A program made the position numbers and the translations under genes. DNA of 63,393 nucleotides, counting the filler, from Octopus bimaculoides (taxonomy: Eukaryota): assembly GCF_001194135.2 (NCBI RefSeq). It is 6 parts of 6 records of this genome, joined end to end, with 100 filler letters (N's around TTAATTAATTAA, not from the genome) between each part and the next. Parts side by side here need not be neighbours in the genome. Positions count along the whole stretch, not along the records: positions 28,637 to 40,065 come from NC_068982.1; 5 more parts are not named here. One strand, written 5' to 3'. The notes under the pieces are model-generated. The model ran no database searches and was not told the origin of the DNA. It worked only from the letters and a program-made list of their open reading frames with translations. Numbering within the stretch: position 1 is the stretch's first letter; each line of letters begins with the position of its first letter. Shown here piece after piece: positions 28,637 through 40,065 of the stretch.

Positions 28637-28675
<39 letters not shown>

Positions 28676-28724
28676 CATATACACATATACATCCATACAT
28701 ATACATATATGTACGTACACACAC

Positions 28725-29140
28725 GATAGACGTGTGGTAATAAAGGTAATGGCAATGTTATATATATAGGAAAATGATGCTTTTATGAACTAATAAGATA
28801 TTAAGTGTATGACAATATATAAAGGTGATGAATGGTCTATTGATCTAAAGAGAGAGATTGTGGTGTTAAGTGAAATGTAAATTAGAGGGGGAAAAATAAG
28901 GGATTAATGGAGTAAAAATTACTTGTTTAAACTAAGTTAATATTATTACCAAAGTTTACTTCGATATTCACGCTCTATATTTGTTGATACAAATATTTAC
29001 CAATAAATAAAATAAAGTGAAGAGATCTATTTTGTGTGGAGCAGTATTTTATATGTAATAAAGTAGGGGGAAGAAAATATATATATGTTTTGAATTCATC
29101 TTACGATAAACGTAAACAAACAAACAAAGATTGCTTTCAG
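28725..29140 (+). repeat. Second copy of the interior of element A
   Basis: Colinear similarity to 7005-7397 (ataggaaaatgatgct..., ttattaccaaagtttacttcga, gattgctttca). Confidence 0.8.
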
Positions 29141-29169
29141 AAGCTTTGATATGTCTTAGACAGTTAAAG

Positions 29170-29620
29170 AAGCTTACCAGGCCGGTCTGTCATGCCAAGC
29201 TTTCAAGAAGAATTTGAAGACGTAGAGTTTTGTTTTCAGAAAGATAAGACACCTCCACTCAACTATAATAATGTAAAAGCTTACAATGGACAAAGAGGTT
29301 CGGTAGAATACCTTTCGCGTCTACAGGACCTCACACCACTAAACTTTTGGTTTGGGGAGAAACTTAAAAGATAAAGCTTAAGGTACAAAACCGGCAACTC
29401 TCGACGAATTCAGGATAGCCATTGAACGAGAATGTGCAAAAATACCGAACGAAATGTTTTTTGATGTTTGCGATTCCATTGCTTCGGGTTATCAGTGATG
29501 CCCAGATTAGAACAGTCATCAGTTTGAAAATAGTCCTTCATTAAAAAATTCTATTCTGTCTATAGTTTCTCTTAAATTTTGAAAATGAAATGTATTTTAA
29601 TAAACACAGACTAGTTAATC
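29170..29620 (+). mobile_element. Tc1/mariner 3' remnant
   Basis: SRLQDLTPLNFWFG resembles the SPDLTPLDF.LWG motif; decayed. Confidence 0.55.
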
Positions 29621-30787
29621 ATTCAATATGTCACAACCTCTACACTTGGAAAACTTTGACTTTGTGTCAGAATGAAACATTTATCTTGGGTGTTTCAATC
29701 ATAACCGATCTTTATTCTGTATCCTGCTGAGGCTCAATTCGCTTTGATTAGTTTTAAAACTGAAAATGAAACTTGAAGAGCAAAATATTTGCTGCTTTGA
29801 TTTCACATTAGCGAAACCACGCGAATGCGTGACTGAAAAGTTTACAATACGAAAAATTTCTGAAGAGAAAAATGAAATTTGTAATGTATTAAATTTTTAA
29901 CATATAATATGCTGTTTAATATGTTAAATGATATTGCATAACAAATAGTATCAGCAAATAACTAACATATCAGAACCAACCAACAAGCAATCCATTTATA
30001 TATTTTTAATTTACGCACATTTTCATTTTGAGCTGATTTGCAACTCACCTCGCTGCTTTCTGAAAAATATGCAGTTGTTTTCAGTTTTCTTTCCTTTTTT
30101 TAAAAAAATTACGTAATTGATCTAGGAAATTTCTCATATTAGTCTTTGGTCTCTTCATAAGTACAGAAGTATACATTATGGATACCACTGCAAATATGTT
30201 AATGAAACAAGATTCATGTAATATGTCTTAAAAAGTTATCTTTATCAAATATTTATTCTTTTTTCTCTCTCATCTTTTACTTTTACATACGCAGTTTTAT
30301 GTCCCTCTACATACCCGTATTTGAAGAAAAGTGGAATTAATCAGCTCCTGTAATGTATCTCCATCCTGGAGTTCAAAATCATCAGTTAGCCAGTCTGCCT
30401 CGGTGTAATGTTGCCTTGCATTTCTTCAGTCCAAACAATCTTAATCTCTTTGCTGAAATTGCTCGGTTATACTCATAAGACTCTTAAGTAAGGGATTATT
30501 TGCAGTCTTCAGTCTTAGGTCATCTATGTAGATGAGATTTTTGGTGGGCCTAGTCCTTCCATTAGATAAGATGATAGTATTTTCCCTAAGGTACTGTCTC
30601 TCTTCCAACGAACATTATCTCAGGTACTACGTAGAGTTTTAGATTGTCCGTGAAAAAGAGATGGTAGATATGCCCAGTTTTTCTTCCCTTTATGTAGTAC
30701 GCCAAATATTATATAAGTTCTAATTATCTCTGAAGATTTGGTACTTTTTTCTCTGTGTAGTATCTCAGATACCATATACAATTTTAA

Positions 30788-31051
30788 ATGCCACAGTATT
30801 GCTCGTTGAAACTTGTTGATGCCTGTCTAATTTGAAGCCTTTATAAGCATGGAATCTGTTTACAGATTATCATTCAATTGTCGAGAGTGGTGGTAGAAGT
30901 GCCTCAACTCTCCTACTTATTAGTAAGGTAAGGGATAAAATTATTGGAATGTACATATGAAAATAATTATATATATTGTATATTGCATTGCATTATCTAT
31001 AAAGATTTTGTAGTGAATATTTATTTATTTATTATATATTTACCTGTTAAC

Positions 31052-31087
<36 letters not shown>

Positions 31088-32724
31088 CACACAATTTCAT
31101 AAATATAACTTTTTTGTCCTACAGATGTCTAAAAGGCGCATCAAATCACTAACTGTGGAAGAGATTTTGACCACACTGGAAGAAGTTATGGAAGAGGAAG
31201 AGGTAAAATCGGCAGATGCTGTTTATCATCCCACCAGAAGCTGATGCATATTTTCTGATCCACCAATCATGCTTATCGACACCTCCCATATATGCGCTGT
31301 AATTTTTGAACACATGGGGTTGAGAAACTGAACACTTTGCTTTGCATTCCTTCAGCCAACGTTGCACTTTTTGAAGAGGTTCCACTGTATCATAATTAGT
31401 TCCAATAGTGATGCATGTATTATCAAGCCATTTTACGAAAATAATTTCTTCATTGGTGTCAAATCTAAAGCTGTATGTTCCTCTGTTTTGCTTTTTCAGT
31501 TCTTTTGCTTCCATCAAAGTACATTTCTTTAGCCTGTTCTCGCGCACAGTTCCAGTTGCTTGAAAACCGAGTTCGCGAAGATGAACCAGTAACTCATATC
31601 CGGTAAATAAGTTATCAAAGAAGACACTATATGATTGTGGTTCTTCTACGACATCTAGCATGTTCAATATAACTTTTGATCCAAGCAGTAAGTCTACGCG
31701 ATTGTCATCAGATGAGCTCTTGCCACAATAAAGATCAAAATTGTAGCAATAACCAGAGACACCGCATATTGCCCAAAACTTGTAGCCAAACCTAATTGGC
31801 TTACTCCTAATGAATTGTTTCAGAGTGTGATGGCCATAACATTTGACTATCATTTCATCAACGGCAAGGTGTTCTTCAAAAATACCAAATTTCATGAATG
31901 ATTTTTGTGCAGCAGCAATCAGTTTTCTTACTTTGAATCCTCTATCATTTTTATTATTTTCGGCTTCATTAATGTCGCAGAAATGTAGAATGCTTTTCAT
32001 TTCTTGGAATCTTGATCTAGACATTGCATTTTTCACGATTTGTAGGTCCAGATCTTCATCGTTTGACCAGTATTGTGTTTCTGCGGGGAATTTATGATAA
32101 CCGGATATTAGTAACACTCCAATGAATAGTTTTATGTCGTCTGAGCTAATTATAGTTGTGGGCCTGTTCTTACATTCTGTAGCATATCTAACACTTTCTC
32201 TGACCATGAGCTGTACTATTTCTTCAGAAAAAAATTTCTTCAAATACCTCAACTGGAGTTGAGCCCTTCAACTGTTCTTTCCTGTTCATCAAGTTACTTT
32301 CATAAGCCTTACTGCGATCATGAACTTTTGTATATTCCGGTGCCTTACACCGCCATGTTGGTACTGAATTGCATAGTTTTTTTTTTTGGTAAATGCATTG
32401 TTTCAACGCCAATTTCCGGATAGTTAGCAACATATTCTCCTGTTGTATTCTCAATTACTTCTTCACTGACGATCTGTGCAGCAACATGTAATTCGAATGA
32501 TCCGGCTACGTCCTCAATGTCAGCATTTCCAGTACAGTCATCGTCAATGTCTTCATTGTCAGTTTGTGCATCAGCTTCTGGTGGGATGATAACAGCATCT
32601 GCCGATTCTACATCTTCCTCTTCCATAACTTCTTCCAGTGTGGTCAAAATCTCTTCCATAGTTAATGATTTGATGCGCCTTTTAGACATCTGTAGGACAA
32701 AAAAGTTATATTTATGAAATTGTG

Positions 32725-32766
<42 letters not shown>

Positions 32767-32783
32767 AAGGGGGGAGAGAAGGG

Positions 32784-32824
<41 letters not shown>

Positions 32825-32895
32825 AAGAGAGAGAGACAGACAGAGAATGAATGAATAAAAGTTATCTGGCGTCATAACATCAGGGTCATCGAACC

Positions 32896-32985
<90 letters not shown>

Positions 32986-32986
32986 A

Positions 32987-33024
<38 letters not shown>

Positions 33025-33289
33025 TTAACAGGTAAATTTACAATAAATAAATAAAAATTCACTACAAAATATTTATTGATAATGCAATGCAATATACAAT
33101 ATATATATAATTATTTTCATATGTACATTCCAATAATTTTATACCTTACCTTACTCATAAGTAGGAGAGTTGAGGCACTTCTACCACCACTCTCGACAAT
33201 TGAATGATAATCTGTAAGCAGATTCCATGCTTATAAAGGCTTCAAATTAGACAAGCATCAACAAGTTTCAACGAGCAATACTGTGGCAT
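30788..33289 (-). mobile_element. Symmetric PGBD2/3-like piggyBac flanked by TTAA on both sides
   Basis: TTAA at 30784-30787 and 33290-33293. 30788-31248 is an inverted copy of 32567-33289, apart from an insertion in the (GA)n intron of the right arm. Confidence 0.85.
31149..32689 (-). pseudogene. piggyBac transposase (PGBD3-like), two homopolymer frameshifts, C-terminally truncated
   Basis: ATG at 32689 directly after a tcctacAG acceptor. AVDEM (D 31857-59), KQFIRSKPIRFGYKFW, FFDNLFT (D 31614-16), YMGGVDKHD (D 31275-77). Frameshifts at A-runs near 32380 and 32230. No C-terminal Cys-rich domain. Confidence 0.9.
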
Positions 33290-33663
33290 TTAATTAGAAC
33301 TCATTCCCCGCCTTCTTGTAGATTGTATGTCACCTTTTCTCACGTTACAATCATGTGACGTTATCGTCACCCCCCCCCCCTCACACACACATCGCTTGTA
33401 TGACGCATCCCTGACTGCATGTAGTCACGAAGTTAACAAAGGCGATGCCGGACTTAGTCATGCACTGCTAGGCCCAGGACATATTCTTCGATATGCACAG
33501 TCACTATACGTAACATGTTTCTCTTCCTATCATAAGTAGAATGGCTGAAGATAAAAGTAGCTATAAAAAAATTGATCAAAGTGTGCAGTCACGATATGTG
33601 TAAACTGTTTCTCTTCATATTGTTATAATTACATAGGACAAATATTTTTAGCATTAATTCATA

Positions 33664-34436
33664 CTAGAAGAGATACTCGACGTTTCCCGTGTTACGTGCA
33701 ATTTAAGAATGAGACTTTTCTGTTATATATTCTGTAAGGAACTGGAATACCTATGATTCGAATTTCATCAAAATTGCACATGGGGGTTCTTTCCCTTCTT
33801 TACACACTGTAAAAAAATTCTAATCATGACACATGTATCCCATACTATTGATCTTTATGCCCATATTCCATAATTCCAGTCTTCTGGATCCCGTAAAAAG
33901 GATTTTGCTCCTGAAAAATGGAGCTCATGGAGCTGTAAAATGTGGGAATGGAGGCCCCTATTGGGGGTGGGTGTGTTAATGTCAACCTGAGACGTTGAAT
34001 TGTTGGGAATGTTTTTAACTTGGGTCTTATAGTATGCCTGTATATATGTGAGAGTATAGTTTCACTTTAATAGTTTCAGTATGAAATTGAAAGTATTAAA
34101 GTGAAAGTATCTGGCATTATAGTAGCGACATGTTATTGTTTCACTTTTGACATGTAATACCGAAGTAGTAGAATAGTTTCAGTATTAAAGTGAAAGTATC
34201 TGACATTACAGTAGAGTGATGTTATTGTTTCACTTTTGACACGTAATACTGAAATAGTGGAGGAGATATGATATTGGTGTGGGCTCGAACTATGCAAGAA
34301 GTTAAAAAAAGTTTTTGGCCTAAGACACTACATGGACCCTAATTAAGCCATGTATAAATTTGGAATGAAATTGGTTGTGTAGTTCTCGAGTTTTAGGGAT
34401 TCACACAGACACACATTCTCATCTTTATATATATAG

Positions 34437-34437
<1 letters not shown>
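33664..34437 (-). mobile_element. Non-autonomous Helitron (~775 bp)
   Basis: Minus strand: A|TCTATATATATAAAGATGAGAATGTGTG... 5' end at 34437; degenerate subterminal hairpin and CTAG|T 3' end at 33664 (AT target). Internal ~90-bp tandem duplication at ~34085-34260. Confidence 0.7.
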
Positions 34438-34474
<37 letters not shown>

Positions 34475-34570
34475 AAACACACACATATATATATTTATAT
34501 CAATATAAATACATGAAAGTCAATGAAGTTTGGTAAAAAAGGTGATCATGTACAAACTTTCTTGTTGTCA

Positions 34571-37500
34571 TTATAACACCTCGTTGTAAACAATATTCCT
34601 TGTTTTTCCTTGTGGAGCATATGCAAATAGGTTTGTTTTGCTTCCCACTCTTGAGCAGCCAACATACAGTTGTCCATGTGAGAAGCATGGCTCTTCCAAG
34701 AGAAGACCAGCTACAGAGAGGGTTTGACCCTGAGATTTGTTAATGGACATGGCGAAAGTGACACGAAGAGGGAATTATAGTCTTCTGAATGTAAAAGGAA
34801 TGTCTGCTCCTGATGGAGTAAGAGGAATTCTTGGAATAAAGACGTCATCACCTTTTCCACATCCAGAAAGAATGGTAGCCTCGATAACGTGTGACATCAT
34901 CTTCTTTATCACGAGTCGTGTTCCATTGCAAAGTCTTGGTGGTTCCAGATTGCGGAGTAGCATAACAGGCGCTCCAACTTTAAGTGATAATATGTGGGAA
35001 GGTAGTCCAGGATGCTCCAACGAATTGAGAAATTCAAGAGGATAGTTCGCCACTTCATTTGTATCTGGAACTGTATCAACAGACTTGTAAGTTTGAAGAT
35101 TGCCGGGAAGAGAATGCATCAGCTGTTGGTTAATTTTTGTAACAGCTAAGTTTTTTGGCGCTAATATTGCTCTTTCACATAGCCAATTGTGATTTAGGTA
35201 GTTTTCTTTGAAGTTGGGAAAGACTTTGTATTTGAGGTCATCTACAGAATTAACAACAGAGCAAAATGGTCATACTTCCATTTCTCCTGCAGCGTCGAGA
35301 GGCACCTTGCCATCACCAATTGTCAAAATGTCCTGTGCAAACTTTTTGGACATTTGGTCGCCGTGTAGCTGAGCTCTCATGTTAGTATTAAGACTGAGGA
35401 TGGTAACATGATGCCACAGGGTAGAGGTCTGTAGGCATGCTTGGACCTCATCTGCTCTAGTGCCTTTCGGAATAACAGGAAGAGTTTGCCCGAAATCACC
35501 TAACAACAGAAGCGTAACACCTCTCATTGGAGCGTGACAGTCGCGGATGTCTTTCAGGGCTCTATCTAATGTTTCCAAAGCTCTCTTGTGAGCCATGGTG
35601 CATTCATCCCAGACAATTAGATGACACATTTGAAGTACCTGCCCCTGATCAGAGCTTTTGGTGATGTTGCATGAAGGCATATCGGATGCTACTAAATTGA
35701 GAGGGAATTTGAAAGTCGAGTGCGCTGTCCTGCCACTGGGTAACAAAGTAGCTGCAATCCCAGAGGAAGCCACAGCTACTGCAATGTCCTGATGCTGCCT
35801 AACTTGTGCAAATAGAAGCTTTGTTATAAATGTTTTTCCTGTCCCTCCAAGAGCATCAAGGAAGAAGATTCGTCCCTCACGTTGGCGTACTCTGTTAATA
35901 ATAGTTGTCTAAGCCTGCAGCTGGTCCGGAAGTAATTTATGCTCGTTTTCAGCAATGTACTCTGAAAGCGCTTGAATGTCGTAAGATGTTTCACGAATGA
36001 CAGCAGTGGGAAGGCTATTTGACCCTGACCTGAATGTTTGTGGCAGGCCATATGTGGACAATTCATTACCACCCAGTGTGGCAATTCTGTCTTCAATGTC
36101 AATGAGAGTTTTGTTGTAGACTTCATTGCTGATACTCTCCATGTCAGGATAGAGCCGTTGAGCTTGCCGGTGAAAGTCTTCAGCCAGGTTGTCCCTGTAC
36201 TTGAGCCATAAAGTTGCAGGATCACACAGTTCGCATGTCTGCAGTTATACTGCAAATAGTGCCCTGAGATTTTTAGGTGATTGTGATAAAGCAGCCCCTC
36301 CGAAAGTTGCATCCCATTGTGCACCATCTTCTAACAGTCTTTATCGATAGCAGGCTTCTCTGTATGTTGTGCAGACATGTCCATGAACGGTTTTTAGGGC
36401 CTGAAAACATGTGGGGCCTCTGACCTCATGCAGTAGTAGGTGGAGGTAGAAGCACTCTCGTCGAGTGGGATGTACTGTGTATACTCGGCCAAGGTAAGTG
36501 TCAAAGTTAATGCCAGGGTATCCATGAACATTTTGACCTACTTTCCTTGGGGTCCATTGTTTTCCATTCCAAGTATAGTACGATGGAATCTGTGGATACA
36601 GTAAGGTTTGAGTGAATGGATCAACTTGACAGAGCTTGAAGAATGCAGTGAGTGTGCTATCCCTTGGTTGCTCTGCCAACAGAGAAGCATTAGCATCGGT
36701 GAAGTACTCTTTGACCGTTTTCCAGGTGCACTGCAAGCTGTTGAACGGCGGTGTGTCATTGGTGAAGTGGAAAGCCAAAGATGCGCCAGAAAGCCTCGTT
36801 TCTACTTATGTAGCGTCCCACCTGATAGTGCGTCACCTCATCGTGGCAGTATTGTTGTTGAAGTGCAAACATTGCAGCGTCAGAACCCTTGTTCACATAC
36901 TTGCAAACATACTTGATGGACTTAACGGAGTTGCAAAATTCAACGTTAATCTGGTCATTGAAAATCTTTGACAGGAGTGGGCAGTAGAGAACAATCCATC
37001 TATTATCAACCGCGTGCTGTCCGATAGTTGCTGTGACACTGCCGTCTTGTGGTTTTCTCCGTCTGTATGATGGATACCCACCAGCACCTGTTTGAGCTTG
37101 TTGTAGGAACTTCCTTGGAAACTTTTTTGAACATACGCTGCCTTTCAAACATGGTGAGGTAATATTGAATCCACACCCACATGGACCATGCACCATGTTT
37201 GCTTTTACTATGTCGTATAGTACTTTGTCTAAAGCTGGATCAGGAAGTTCTGCAGAGATTATGTTGTCGATGTCAGTTGATTTGATCTTCGTTGAGAGCC
37301 AAAGCAGGACATGAGCATGTGGAAGGCTCATGCCATTCGATTGTGTACATGTCACATTGTATGGGTCCGAAGATTTGCCCTTTTTTTAGGAGGTCCATGA
37401 GAGTAATTAATTTCAGATGGAAAACTCGGGCGAGCAGGTCATGTCTGTCTTTAGGCTTTTGACGGAAGAAGAGTTCGGCCTGAATCTCCTTCCACTTGGG

Positions 37501-39276
37501 ATTGCAAGTGAAAGTGATGAATAAGTCAGGCCTGCCGTAATAGCGAACAAAGGTCATTGCATCCTGTCTTCTTTCATGCATATATCGGGGACTTCCAGTG
37601 AATGTGGAAGGTAAGATGCAAAGTCTTCCTATGCTTGTTGGAGAAGCATCATTGTTGATAGCATCTCGGAGACGGATGTAGCTGTCAGAGCGCAATTTTT
37701 GTTGATGTGATCTGATGAAACACAATCTCTCTGATTCCATTTTTGCGCACATATCAACTTCAAATTGATGAAACAGATCTCGAAACTGGTGGAGGTGATT
37801 ACAGGAGTTGTTTCGTGTCATAAATCGGTATGAGTAGAAGTCCATGCAGGATACTGGCTTGTTGAGATATTCATTACGATTTTGTGGATGTTGCTATGCT
37901 ATACCGATGTGGTAGCCATCCTCACCGTAAACAAACAGAAGTGGATACTGAAGTGTGTCGTATGATCTGTGTGTTTCTGTAATTCGTTGGAGGGTGGTGT
38001 CACGTCGCCTAAGGNNNNNNNNNNGTCGTATGATCTGTGTGTTTCTGTAATTCGTTGGAGGGTGGTGTCACGTCGCCTAAGGACAATGTCTCTGGGATTG
38101 TGCTGTTCACCGTGAAGGAGTACAGCTATTTCATTGCATGCGGGTGAATTGTAACGGCCTACATGTTCTGTAGATGGTCTTTTCTGAGCATCTATGATAA
38201 CATTGAAATTAGAAGAAGCTTCTGTTTCCAAGGCATACTTGAAGCTGCGTACGTAGCTGTTTGTCTGGTGCAGAAGATCTTGTAGTTGCATTATCAATTG
38301 AAATTTAGTGCCATTGGAAATGGAGTTTCGTCGGGTGGCTTGTTCATGTAAATTACCTACAAAGTACAGTTGAAGGAATTGAGGATCTTGATTTTCAGCA
38401 AGTTTGAGCGAGCCTATCCTATGGTAAACCTGTCCCTGAACTTCGAAATTTGGCATAAACCCACCTTCTTGAACAACATTAGCGCCGAAAGATGTCATTT
38501 GGAATGCACAGTTGTACTTGCGGATGTTATTTAGGAAATGTTTCTACTCTCTATTTGTGCCAACGTAGAGTGACTTTAACAGCTGTGGTGGATCCTGCAG
38601 CGGAGTGGGGTTAACTTTTCCATTAGCGCAAAACATAGCAGGAGTTTCTCTGGACCACTTATTATCATTGCAGAAAGAGCAAGTGATGGACATATCTCCA
38701 ATGTTTATATCTGAGTGGCCATCATAATGAAGGTTAGGGTTGTAGCTGAAAGCCTTTAATAACCATCGTGAGCTGCATGGCGTTGAAAATACTCGTCTAT
38801 GAGCTCTTTGTTGAATGGTACTCTGCAGCATAGAATGTCTCTGTTGTAATGTGTGGAAAGCTCGCACAGCAGCCATGTTGGCAGCATTCCTGAGCAGGCA
38901 TGTAGCGCGTTCGTTTTTTCTTCTCTGCAGCACGTGCAGCAGCAGTTGAGGCACAATCAGCACTTCGCCGAACTTTACGCTGGTATTGAGTCTCTGCAGC
39001 TTGTGCAGCAACAGTTGAGGCAACATCAGCACTTCGTCGTACTTGACGCTGGTGTTAAGTCTCTGCGGCTCGTGCATCAGCAGTTGAGGCAGCATCAGCA
39101 CTTCGTCGAAGTGTACGCTGGTGATCTGTTTGGAGTGTTCTTGAAGTGGTTGTACGTTCAGCATTTTGTGATCGTCTAATGTCAGTTTCCAACGACGATT
39201 CATTTGCCCTTCTTGCTGATGATGTTGCAGCTTTCGCAGTTTCGTGTCCAATTGAAGAAGTCTTTCTTCGGGGCAT
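34571..39276 (-). pseudogene. Decayed autonomous Helitron RepHel (HUH Rep + Pif1 helicase)
   Basis: Start MPRRKTSSIG. Rep motifs RPDLFITFTCNP, LPHAHVLLWL, KYVCKYVNKG. Helicase FLDALGGTGKT, ASSGIAATLL, WDEC, GDFGQTLPV, LCNGTRL, SINKSQGQT, FSHGQLYV; stop at 34571. Many frameshifts and stops. Confidence 0.95.
38925..39125 (-). repeat. Three ~69-bp (23-codon) tandem repeats in the Helitron N-terminus
   Basis: cagttgaggca..catcagcacttcg..acgctggt..agtctctgc x3, encoding QR.VRRSAD.AST.AARAAET-like units. Confidence 0.8.
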
Positions 39277-40065
39277 GATCTAAAATAAGCATGATGAAAT
39301 GCAGTGAGATACACTGTGAAGTATGAAATATTAATTGAATGGCTATTATGTAAGTGTAGATAATTTGCAAACTTGCAACTGCTGCGGTAATAATGAAGTG
39401 GTATTAGAACGGTAAATGTGTCCACTAACATGATGTTAGTGTTATGACATGAAAATGGCAATAGTTGTGAAAGGCACGGCGAGAGAAATGGTAATAGGAA
39501 AGGAGAAAGTCGTAATGAAATGTGTTGGGAAAGTTATCGTCTGTGTGGACATGAATTTTGGGTGTTGTTTGTCAATGCATGTCTGGTCTGCCGTATAGGG
39601 AAAGGGTTGTAGTAACGCAGCTGTCACTCTCCATCTTTCGGACTTATGCTTATAGGAAAGTTGGTTATACATCATTAGATGTATACCTGACTTTCCTATA
39701 TAAAATTAGAAATATAACGGAACGCTGAACTCCGACTATCAACTTAAACAACATTTATTCAGGTGGTAAATATATACATCTTTAGCTCTTGTTTGTTGTT
39801 ACAGCTTCTGTGTGTGTGAGCATTGTTGTTTGGACGTTTGGTATGTAGATGTAAGCGAGCTGTCGAGCGTAAGTTCGAAAGATGAAGAGAGACAGCTAAA
39901 CACGTAAAGAGACTGTCTCCAGAGTTGGAATGTTGGAGACACTGCTTGACACGTCCATGCTCATGGCCGGCTGACCGAGAAAGAGAGAGAATAGAAGCGG
40001 GAACGCTTGGTTGTTTAATTCCACGCATGCGTGAGACTACGCATGCGCACGGCGTTACTACACGC

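What the first reader, a model, noticed from the sequence alone, without database searches (positions are those of the whole stretch)
30784..33293. Symmetric piggyBac whose 3' end is replaced by an inverted copy of its own 5' end
Seen: the transposase runs to just past the third catalytic Asp (GGVDKHDWWIRKYA) and joins, at a TGCA microhomology (31245-31248 / 32567-32570), an inverted copy of the element's 5' region. That copy includes the terminus, leader, intron and ~40 codons. Both outer ends read TTAA|ATGCCACAGTATTGCTCG. The result is 461/723-bp giant inverted arms, loss of the C-terminal Cys-rich domain and two convergent cassettes. Inference: this could be a two-left-end mobile unit, a source of sense/antisense dsRNA silencing the family in trans, or two head-to-head copies fused by deletion. 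The arms differ by a few percent, so either the event is not recent or the arms derive from two copies.
Basis: partly seen in the sequence, partly recalled or inferred. Interest (0 to 1): 0.7.

Follow-up and report, generated by a model that had tools for sequence, protein, structure and literature searches.

The report
Rearranged dead piggyBac lacking true ends
This is a broken piggyBac-type jumping gene, probably in an octopus genome, whose rear half was long ago replaced by a flipped copy of part of its own front; because it lacks the family's real end sequences it is most likely an immobile DNA-repair scar, not a new kind of mobile element.

Summary
The sequence facts hold. Arms 30788-31248 (+) and 33289-32567 (-) are 97% identical over 464 aligned bases. 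Both abut TTAA, and the flanks are unrelated. The minus-strand body is a piggyBac DDE transposase that stops 10 codons after the third Asp, at a TGCA joint (31245-31248).

The arms are not transposon termini. Relatives (Octopus bimaculoides proteins at 90-92%, a Palaemon chromosome, Tara and Logan contigs) show the family's real ends:
- The ends read TTAA|CCCATTACCTMCCA ... GGG|TTAA, with 22-bp palindromes beside them.
- The window's arms begin about 0.45 kb inside the canonical 5' end.
- No terminal repeat or palindrome occurs anywhere in the piece.

- Two frameshifts, one of them shared with an octopus copy.
- A 240-bp plus-strand fragment of the family's 3' coding end (33427-33666), 133 bp beyond the right arm.
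- The fact that both arms stop at the same internal base.

Best reading: an old, immobile relic assembled by microhomology-mediated break repair, either template switching or filler copying from another copy. A two-left-end mobile unit is unlikely, and wild-type T. ni piggyBac does not move LE/LE substrates. A Mu-killer-like hairpin role is possible but untested. Read data were unavailable.

The parts
30784..30787 (.). Left border TTAA
   Evidence: Read directly. Arm homology ends here. TTAA occupies only 0.5% of positions in the piece.
30788..31248 (+). Left arm, 461 bp. It holds an internal part of the 5' leader (30788 to about 30927), a putative 5'-UTR intron (about 30928-31124, with (CT)n at 31051-31087), the ATG at 31125 and 41 codons. 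A private 1-bp insertion at 31222 leads to a stop at 31242-31244.
   Evidence: The leader is homologous to L017 181-330 from window 30800 onward.
31245..31248 (.). TGCA microhomology joint between the left arm and the inverted transposase body
   Evidence: Arm-to-arm homology runs to 31248. Homology of the body to the intact relative L001 runs to 31242-31245 (= L001 1831). The parental sequences are GCTGATGCA|CAA and TTGTTGCA|TATTT.
31245..32252 (-). piggyBac DDE domain, open frame, with D1 at 31857-59, D2 at 31614-16 and D3 at 31275-77. It ends 10 codons after D3. The ORF then reads 31 antisense-of-arm codons to a stop at 31149.
   Evidence: Pfam DDE_Tnp_1_7, E 2.9e-65. piggyBat transposase 9c0f, E 5.9e-15. 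94% nt identity to L001, 91% to L004, 86% to L002. 90% aa identity to O. bimaculoides P0130.
32230..32689 (-). N-terminal region of the transposase, starting at ATG 32689. It carries two frameshifts: one in the A-run at about 32373-32385 and one in the T-run at about 32234-32240.
   Evidence: tblastn places it in three frames. Alignment to seven relatives. The first frameshift is also read in O. bimaculoides P0130 ('KTMQFSTNMAV'), so it is old and real.
32567..33289 (-). Right arm, 723 bp. It is the same segment as the left arm and is contiguous with the body. The intron carries an expanded (GA)n block at 32727-33024 with about 60 bp of non-repeat insert.
33290..33293 (.). Right border TTAA
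33294..33426 (.). 133-bp spacer of unknown origin between the right border and the 3' fragment. It is not related to the family.
   Evidence: No homology to any relative or to the canonical 5' end.
33427..33666 (+). 240-bp fragment holding the family's last ~28 codons (end of the Cys-rich domain, frameshifted) plus the first part of the 3' UTR. It lies on the same strand as the left arm and stops short of the 3' palindrome and the terminus.
   Evidence: Matches L001 2104-2346 (88%), L004 1241-1476 (87%) and L002 25309-25539 (82.5%). tblastn to P0002 residues 375-402. The window lacks L001 1832-2103 and 2347-2599.

Best explanation
This is an old, immobile relic of a TTAA-specific piggyBac-like element. 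It was put together by DNA break repair and is not a transposon with two left ends.

Shown:
- A minus-strand copy runs from an internal point of its 5' leader, through the intron, the ATG and the DDE domain, to 10 codons past the third catalytic Asp.
- There a 4-bp microhomology (TGCA) joins it to an inverted second copy of the first 461 bp of the same segment.
- The family's terminal repeats, its palindromic subterminal motifs, about 0.45 kb of 5' end and the whole 3' end are absent.
- The reading frame is broken and lacks the C-terminal DNA-binding domain.

Inferred:
- The inverted joint was made by microhomology-primed synthesis (template switch or fold-back) or by end joining during repair of a break inside the element. 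The same mechanism has been proposed for other rearranged DNA-transposon derivatives.

The version I favour:
- The left arm and the plus-strand 3' fragment at 33427-33666 are the two remaining ends of one plus-strand copy.
- The 2.18 kb between them (31245-33426) is filler copied in inverted orientation from another copy, running out into that copy's own flank (TTAA plus the 133-bp spacer).

The TTAA at both borders is probably a leftover of transposase-made insertion joints after loss of the 5'-terminal module. That step is conjecture.

The locus cannot transpose on its own and is unlikely to do so in trans. Its only plausible activity is passive formation of hairpin RNA if it is transcribed from outside.
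For: Structure and joint:
-.

Canonical ends of the family, from relatives:
- L001 reads TTAA|CCCATTACCTACC at 648-665. This is where L001/L002 homology begins.
- The same 14-mer, inverted, is followed by TTAA at L014 2055-2072.
- Palindromes GATCTCATATGAGATC lie beside the ends and about 340 bp inside the 5' end in L001, L002, L013, L014 and L017.
- The 340-bp 5' module is conserved in three sources.

Position of the arms relative to those ends:
- L017 shows that the sequence homologous to the arms starts about 95 nt downstream of the inner palindrome.
- No terminal repeat or palindrome is present in 28637-40065, even with 3 mismatches allowed.
- The flanks show no homology to the canonical 5' end.

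The 3' fragment:
- It lies on the same strand and in the right order relative to the left arm.

Age:
- Both arms carry private derived changes, so the event is old.
- A frameshift is shared with an O. bimaculoides copy.

Precedents:
- Inverted microhomology joints and filler DNA appear in transposon derivatives (PMC3814204, which also cites Rubin and Levy 1997).
- Relatives L001 and L002 are themselves internal-deletion derivatives.
Against: - Both arms stop at the same base next to TTAA, and TTAA occupies only 0.5% of positions here. That looks like a transposase-made border. My account needs two copies, or one copy plus a capture step, that share this non-canonical border, and I cannot show that such copies are common.
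- The canonical leader is known from a single distant relative (L017, 62% aa identity in the N-terminus). The host's own sub-lineage could therefore differ at its 5' end.
- The origin of the 133-bp spacer is unknown.
- No reads were available, so the assembly of the joint is unverified.
Confidence: 0.5

Rival explanations
1. Two independent insertions of the family in convergent orientation, one at TTAA 30784 and one at TTAA 33290, were later fused. A deletion removed the 3' part of each copy and the DNA between them, with end joining at TGCA.
For: - Unrelated flanks and TTAA at both borders.
- The arms differ by 3% and each has private changes.
- A third fragment of the family lies 133 bp away, so this neighbourhood has received family DNA more than once.
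Against: - Both copies would have had to lose the same ~0.45 kb of 5' end down to the same nucleotide. That requires either a recurrent sequence-specific loss or an unproven alternative terminus.
- The start of the arm does not resemble the family's 3' subterminal sequence above chance.
- It needs more events: two insertions, two truncations and one deletion.
- Both arms share a derived GAT>GAG change relative to the octopus and Tara relatives. This is weak evidence, resting on one site.
Confidence: 0.2
2. A palindromic derivative was integrated here as a unit by a piggyBac-type transposase acting on two identical non-canonical ends (TTAA|ATGCC...). This would be a natural symmetric-end transposition.
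For: - TTAA sits exactly at both borders, with unrelated flanks.
- TTAA is rare enough (0.5% of positions) that chance is unlikely.
- Any cryptic end in an inverted duplication is automatically present as an inverted pair.
Against: - No terminal repeat or palindromic motif is present.
- The first base is A, whereas piggyBac-like terminal repeats share a conserved first C (PMC5381638).
- LE35/LE35 substrates are inactive for excision and integration with native T. ni transposase (PMC7351741; bioRxiv 10.1101/2022.09.26.509586).
- The chimeric ORF is on no other contig, and none of the 120 homologues carries the antisense tail.
Confidence: 0.08
3. Whatever its origin, the locus now acts as a hairpin-RNA source, in the manner of Mu killer or Ac killer. 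Its small RNAs would silence the family in trans. This is not exclusive of the explanations above.
For: - 461-bp arms at 97% identity, including 124 bp of coding sequence. The predicted stem pairs 447 of 461 left-arm bases, with MFE -773 versus about -264 kcal/mol for shuffled controls.
- Precedents exist in maize (PMC3440606; PMC13635294; bioRxiv 10.1101/2020.01.07.897926).
Against:
- The 5' 0.45 kb of the element is missing, so transcription would have to come from outside.
- Only 124 bp of the stem matches mature mRNA. The rest is leader and intron.
- The arms are decaying like neutral DNA: 3% divergence and a frameshift in the left arm.
Confidence: 0.1
4. The inverted joint is an assembly or read-chimera artefact.
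For: - No read-level check was possible.
- The region is repeat- and microsatellite-rich.
Against: - Fold-back chimeras give identical arms around a symmetric centre. Here the arms differ by 3% and by 261 bp and enclose 1.3 kb of unique body.
- An assembler misjoins inside shared repeats, not at a 4-bp overlap between non-homologous, oppositely oriented sequences.
Confidence: 0.04

Closest known systems
Mu killer (maize) and Ac killer 1
   Same: Both are natural partial inverted duplications of the 5' part of an autonomous DNA transposon, including the start of the transposase gene. Both are capable of forming a long hairpin RNA (PMC3440606; PMC13635294; bioRxiv 10.1101/2020.01.07.897926).
   Different: - Mu killer keeps two copies of the terminal repeat and is transcribed from a flanking gene, and its silencing activity is demonstrated.
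- Ack1 arose by alternative transposition.
- Here the terminal repeats are absent, the joint is a non-TTAA microhomology, the host is an animal, and no RNA evidence exists.
Goblin MITE derived from the Tc1/mariner element Ozma (Aedes aegypti)
   Same: A derivative carrying an inverted duplication of subterminal sequence. Its breakpoints lie at microhomologies in inverted orientation, explained by template switching during gap repair (PMC3814204).
   Different: Goblin keeps both terminal repeats and amplified as a family. This locus has no terminal repeats, is 2.5 kb long and is so far unique.
Engineered LE/LE (symmetric-end) piggyBac substrates
   Same: Two copies of the left side of a piggyBac element in inverted orientation, flanked by TTAA.
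   Different: - The engineered substrates carry the genuine 35-bp left end. They are inactive with wild-type transposase and move only with hyperactive, N-terminally truncated or double-CRD enzymes (PMC7351741; bioRxiv 10.1101/2022.09.26.509586).
- The window's arms start about 0.45 kb inside the left end.
Ordinary degenerate or internally deleted piggyBac-like copies (e.g. relatives L001 and L002 here)
   Same: Same family, carrying deletions and frameshifts typical of decaying copies (PMC5381638).
   Different: L001 and L002 retain the canonical terminal repeats and have simple internal deletions. The window copy has lost the termini and gained an inverted duplication.

Membership tests
piggyBac superfamily (piggyBac-like element) | Transposase with a DDE_Tnp_1_7 domain and the three catalytic Asp | tested here: met
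   Pfam E 2.9e-65. Aligns to piggyBat transposase 9c0f. Asp codons lie in the LAVDE, FFDN and GGVD motifs.
piggyBac superfamily (piggyBac-like element) | Terminal inverted repeats beginning with C, directly flanked by a TTAA duplication | tested here: not met
   Relatives have TTAA|CCCATTACCTMCCA...GGG|TTAA. The window has TTAA but no terminal repeat, and its arms begin with A at an internal position. The family is therefore a member, but this copy is a TIR-less relic.
piggyBac superfamily (piggyBac-like element) | C-terminal Cys-rich DNA-binding domain | tested here: not met
   The ORF ends 10 codons after D3. About 136 residues seen in P0002, P0129 and P0130 are missing. Only the last ~28 codons survive, on the other strand, at 33461-33542.
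Two-left-end (symmetric) transposon | Two genuine left termini in inverted orientation | tested here: not met
   The arms lack the terminal repeat, both palindromes and about 0.45 kb of 5' end.
Two-left-end (symmetric) transposon | Evidence of mobility: the same unit at other loci with different flanks | tested here: inconclusive
   The chimeric ORF is not on any other contig. None of 120 homologues has the antisense tail. The junction-peptide search returned nothing at all. The host genome itself could not be searched.
Transposon-derived hairpin silencer (Mu killer type) | Inverted duplication covering the 5' part of the transposase gene | tested here: met
   461-bp arms, including 124 bp of coding sequence, at 97% identity.
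Transposon-derived hairpin silencer (Mu killer type) | Transcription through the repeat, small RNAs, and trans-silencing | not testable with these tools
Abortive-gap-repair / template-switch transposon derivative | Rearrangement joint at a short microhomology between inverted sites | tested here: met
   TGCA is shared by both parental sequences.
Abortive-gap-repair / template-switch transposon derivative | Derivative sits at the donor site, between the original target-site duplications and with the terminal repeats retained | tested here: not met
   The terminal repeats are absent. Whether the two TTAAs are one original duplication could not be tested.

The most novel reading that the evidence does not exclude
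A palindromic, TIR-less piggyBac derivative was nevertheless cut or integrated by a piggyBac-type transposase at identical cryptic internal ends next to TTAA. That would be natural symmetric-end activity that the wild-type model enzyme lacks. Alternatively, the family routinely sheds its own 5'-terminal module, leaving TTAA|ATGCC borders.
Probability: 0.1. Interest if true: 0.6.

Novelty: new member of a known kind. Interest (0 to 1): 0.25.

Why it matters
As it stands this is one more decayed, rearranged DNA-transposon copy in a repeat-rich genome, so it matters little. Two points could raise its value.

- If TTAA|ATGCCACAG turns out to be a recurrent border in the host genome, it would reveal an internal cleavage site or self-truncation reaction in a piggyBac family. 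That bears on how these elements inactivate themselves and how end asymmetry is read.
- If the locus yields small RNAs, it would be an animal counterpart of Mu killer.

The comparative work also defines the architecture of a piggyBac family that is shared at 80-94% nucleotide identity between cephalopod, decapod and plankton samples. That makes it a candidate for horizontal transfer.

Tried and rejected
No read or RNA evidence could be laid.
- Other copies of the joint:
  - An exact look-up of the chimeric ORF found nothing.
  - A scan of 120 homologues for the antisense tail found nothing.
  - A protein search with the junction peptide returned no candidates at all. It did not return even the window's own protein, so it is uninformative.
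- DNA scans:
  - The 18-mer arm start in metagenome contigs gave 8 hits with no further homology, so they are chance matches.
  - The conserved 22-mer of the leader gave 0 hits in prokaryotic genome contigs and in viral contigs.
  - The transposase gave no hit in viral contigs.
- First guess at the termini: I first took TGAGATCAYTGGG as the family's terminus with a TA duplication (note 2). I rejected this once the true TTAA|CCC...GGG|TTAA ends were found further out.
- Arm start as inner inverted repeat: the idea that the arm start pairs with the sequence inside the 3' palindrome is not above chance.
- Spacer and flanks: homology of the 133-bp spacer, of either flank, or of 33667-34000 to the family was not found.
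- Empty-site test: joining the flanks gives no informative ORF across the join.
- RNA genes: Rfam and tRNA scans of the piece gave only sub-threshold matches.
- Host: the initial guess of a caridean shrimp was replaced by octopus after the cluster look-up.
Full report
**1. What is in the sequence**

The inverted repeat is real.
- Positions 30788-31248 (+) pair with 33289-32567 (-). There are 464 aligned positions, 14 substitutions (96.98% identity, 7 transitions and 7 transversions) and three indels of 2, 261 and 1 bp.
- The 261-bp difference is an expanded (GA)n block with about 60 bp of non-repeat DNA.
- Each arm is preceded by TTAA (30784-30787; 33290-33293) and begins ATGCCACAGTATTGCTCG. 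That 18-mer occurs exactly twice in the window, against none expected.
- Beyond the TTAAs the flanks are unrelated.

The 1.3 kb between the arms, read on the minus strand together with the right arm, is a piggyBac transposase.
- It matches Pfam DDE_Tnp_1_7 at E 2.9e-65, covering profile positions 4-328 of 349.
- It aligns to the solved piggyBat transposase 9c0f.
- The three Asp lie in the LAVDE, FFDN and GGVD motifs, at 31857-59, 31614-16 and 31275-77.

Comparison with an intact relative (L001) puts the end of transposase homology at 31242-31245. Arm homology ends at 31248. TGCA is therefore shared by both parents. The ORF then runs 31 codons through the antisense of the arm.

**2.

(a) The N-terminal region is in three frames.
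- There are two frameshifts, both in homopolymer runs, at about 32373-32385 and about 32234-32240.
- The first is also read in an Octopus bimaculoides protein model (P0130, 'KTMQFSTNMAV'). It is therefore an old, real mutation rather than a sequencing error.

(b) There is a plus-strand 3' fragment 133 bp to the right of the right TTAA.
- It spans 33427-33666 (240 bp) and holds the same family's last ~28 codons (end of the Cys-rich domain) plus the first part of the 3' UTR.
- It is 88% identical to L001 2104-2346, 87% to L004 and 82.5% to L002.
- The window lacks the 272 bp between D3+10 codons and this fragment, and everything after it.

**3. Host and family**

- The closest proteins belong to a 90% cluster that contains O. 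bimaculoides XP_014784749.1 and UniRef A0A0L8G2P6.
- The window's N-terminus is 92% identical to the latter, and its DDE part is 90% identical.
- The host is therefore probably an octopus or a close relative.
- The same family is found at 70-94% nucleotide identity in several other sources:
  - a Palaemon carinicauda chromosome (L002);
  - a contig of the Dibothriocephalus latus assembly (L017);
  - several Tara Oceans and Logan contigs.

**4. The family's real ends**

- In L001 the repeat begins TTAA|CCCATTACCTACC, followed immediately by the perfect palindrome AGTGATCTCATATGAGATCACT. This is exactly where L001 and the Palaemon copy L002 become homologous.
- The same 14-mer occurs inverted at the 3' end of L014 and is followed by TTAA.
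- The family is therefore a standard TTAA|CCC...GGG|TTAA piggyBac-like element with 14-bp terminal repeats. This fits the rule that such repeats start with C (PMC5381638).
- About 340 bp inside the 5' end lies a second copy of the palindrome followed by ATTGGGAGGAAGTGA. It is conserved in L001, L002 and L017.
- A third palindrome lies about 130 bp inside the 3' end.
- L017 is the only relative that retains the leader. In it, the sequence homologous to the window's arms begins about 95 nt downstream of the second palindrome: the alignment runs from window 30800 to L017 181, with a 22-nt identical block.
- The arms therefore start roughly 0.45 kb inside the canonical 5' end.
- Neither the terminal repeat nor the palindrome occurs anywhere in 28637-40065, even with three mismatches allowed.
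- Neither flank resembles the missing 5' sequence.

The statement that the arms 'include the terminus' is therefore not supported. They are two identically truncated internal segments.

**5.

*Two-left-end mobile unit.*
- The cis sequences are missing.
- Even genuine LE35/LE35 substrates are inactive for excision and integration with native T. ni transposase. They move only with hyperactive or re-engineered enzymes (PMC7351741; bioRxiv 10.1101/2022.09.26.509586).
- No other copy of the joint was found in the reachable data. This is weak evidence because the host genome could not be searched.

*Two copies fused by deletion.*
- Two independent insertions would have to be cut back to the same nucleotide.

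*dsRNA source.*
- A read-through transcript would fold into a stem pairing 447 of 461 left-arm bases, with MFE -773 versus about -264 kcal/mol for shuffled controls.
- This is the geometry of Mu killer and Ac killer 1 (PMC3440606; PMC13635294; bioRxiv 10.1101/2020.01.07.897926).
- There is no RNA evidence. The part of the element that might carry the promoter is absent. Both arms are decaying like neutral DNA, with private derived changes in each and a frameshifting insertion in the left one.

**6. How it most likely arose**

- The inverted TGCA joint is the signature of microhomology-primed synthesis or end joining. Inverted-microhomology joints with duplicated subterminal sequence have been described for the Goblin derivative of the mariner-type element Ozma. 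They were explained there by template switching during gap repair, with filler DNA from other loci as a known by-product (PMC3814204).
- Relatives L001 and L002 show that this family does produce repair-type deletion derivatives.
- I favour a model that also accounts for the 3' fragment.
  - The left arm and the fragment at 33427-33666 lie on the same strand and in the right order. I read them as the remains of one plus-strand copy.
  - Its middle was replaced by 2.18 kb copied in inverted orientation from another copy.
- Alternatives are:
  - fold-back priming within a single minus-strand copy, with capture of the second end at TTAA;
  - fusion of two insertions;
  - integration of the palindrome from cryptic ends.
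- One observation that none of these explains cleanly is that both arms stop next to TTAA, a tetramer present at only 0.5% of positions here. That suggests a transposase-made border, perhaps the original target duplication left behind after loss of the 5'-terminal module. I could not test this.
- A suspected inverted-repeat relationship between the arm start and the 3' subterminal sequence is not above chance.

**7. Limits**

- The canonical leader rests on one distant relative (L017).

**8. Verdict**

- The 'symmetric two-left-end piggyBac' interpretation is not supported.
- The object is best filed as a new example of a known kind: a rearranged, dead DNA-transposon relic with an inverted duplication.
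- Interest is low to moderate. It would be raised only if the TTAA|ATGCC border proves recurrent or if the locus makes small RNAs.

Noticed in passing
window 34775-39461 (- strand): A degraded Helitron. It matches Helitron_like_N (E 3.8e-50), PIF1 (E 4.6e-46) and Pif1_2B (E 1.1e-19), split over at least 8 ORFs by frameshifts. Ten N bases fall inside ORF 37899-38498. A 69-bp x3 tandem repeat lies at 38922-39123 in its N-terminal region. Its 3' end was not located, so I cannot say whether the piggyBac relic lies inside it.
   Followed up: partly
L001, L002, L003, L004, L013, L014, L017, L018; proteins P0129, P0130: The same piggyBac-like family is present in several distant sources:
- Octopus bimaculoides (at least 90% aa identity);
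- a Palaemon carinicauda chromosome (86% nt);
- a Dibothriocephalus latus assembly contig;
- Tara Oceans plankton metagenomes (70-91% nt).
This patchy, cross-phylum distribution suggests horizontal transfer, or contamination in the case of the tapeworm contig.
   Followed up: partly
L001 648-1045; L002 23386-23800; L014 1915-2072; L013 259-285; L017 70-110: Family architecture:
- 14-bp terminal repeats, CCCATTACCTMCCA.
- Three copies of a perfect palindrome (core GATCTCATATGAGATC, up to 22 bp): one at the 5' terminus, one about 340 bp inside it, and one about 130 bp inside the 3' end.
- By analogy with the palindromic internal repeat bound by the Cys-rich-domain dimer in T. ni piggyBac (PMC7351741), these may be transposase binding sites.
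- Each terminal module is itself bounded by CCC...GGG.
   Followed up: partly
L001 1017-1045 and L002 23775-23822: Two relatives from different sources are internal-deletion derivatives. They share the same left breakpoint (after ...GGAAGTGATTACAA) but rejoin the ORF at different points, equivalent to window 32030 and 32476.
   Followed up: no
window 29297-29530 (+ strand): By eye, a remnant resembling the C-terminal end of a mariner-type transposase (…DLTPLNFWFGEKLK… / …TKPATLDEFRIAIERECAKIPNEMFFDVCDSIASGYQ…), in two frames with stops. Pfam gave no match to the read-through peptide, so this remains unconfirmed.
   Followed up: partly
window 33498-33533 and 33571-33620: The 3' UTR repeats, about 90 bp downstream, a degenerate copy of the last ~50 nt of the ORF. 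The same duplication is present in L001, L004 and L014, so it is a family feature and not local.
   Followed up: no
window 34092-34258 and 34439-34485: An 89-bp x2 tandem repeat and an (AC)23 microsatellite lie between the piggyBac fragment and the Helitron.
   Followed up: no
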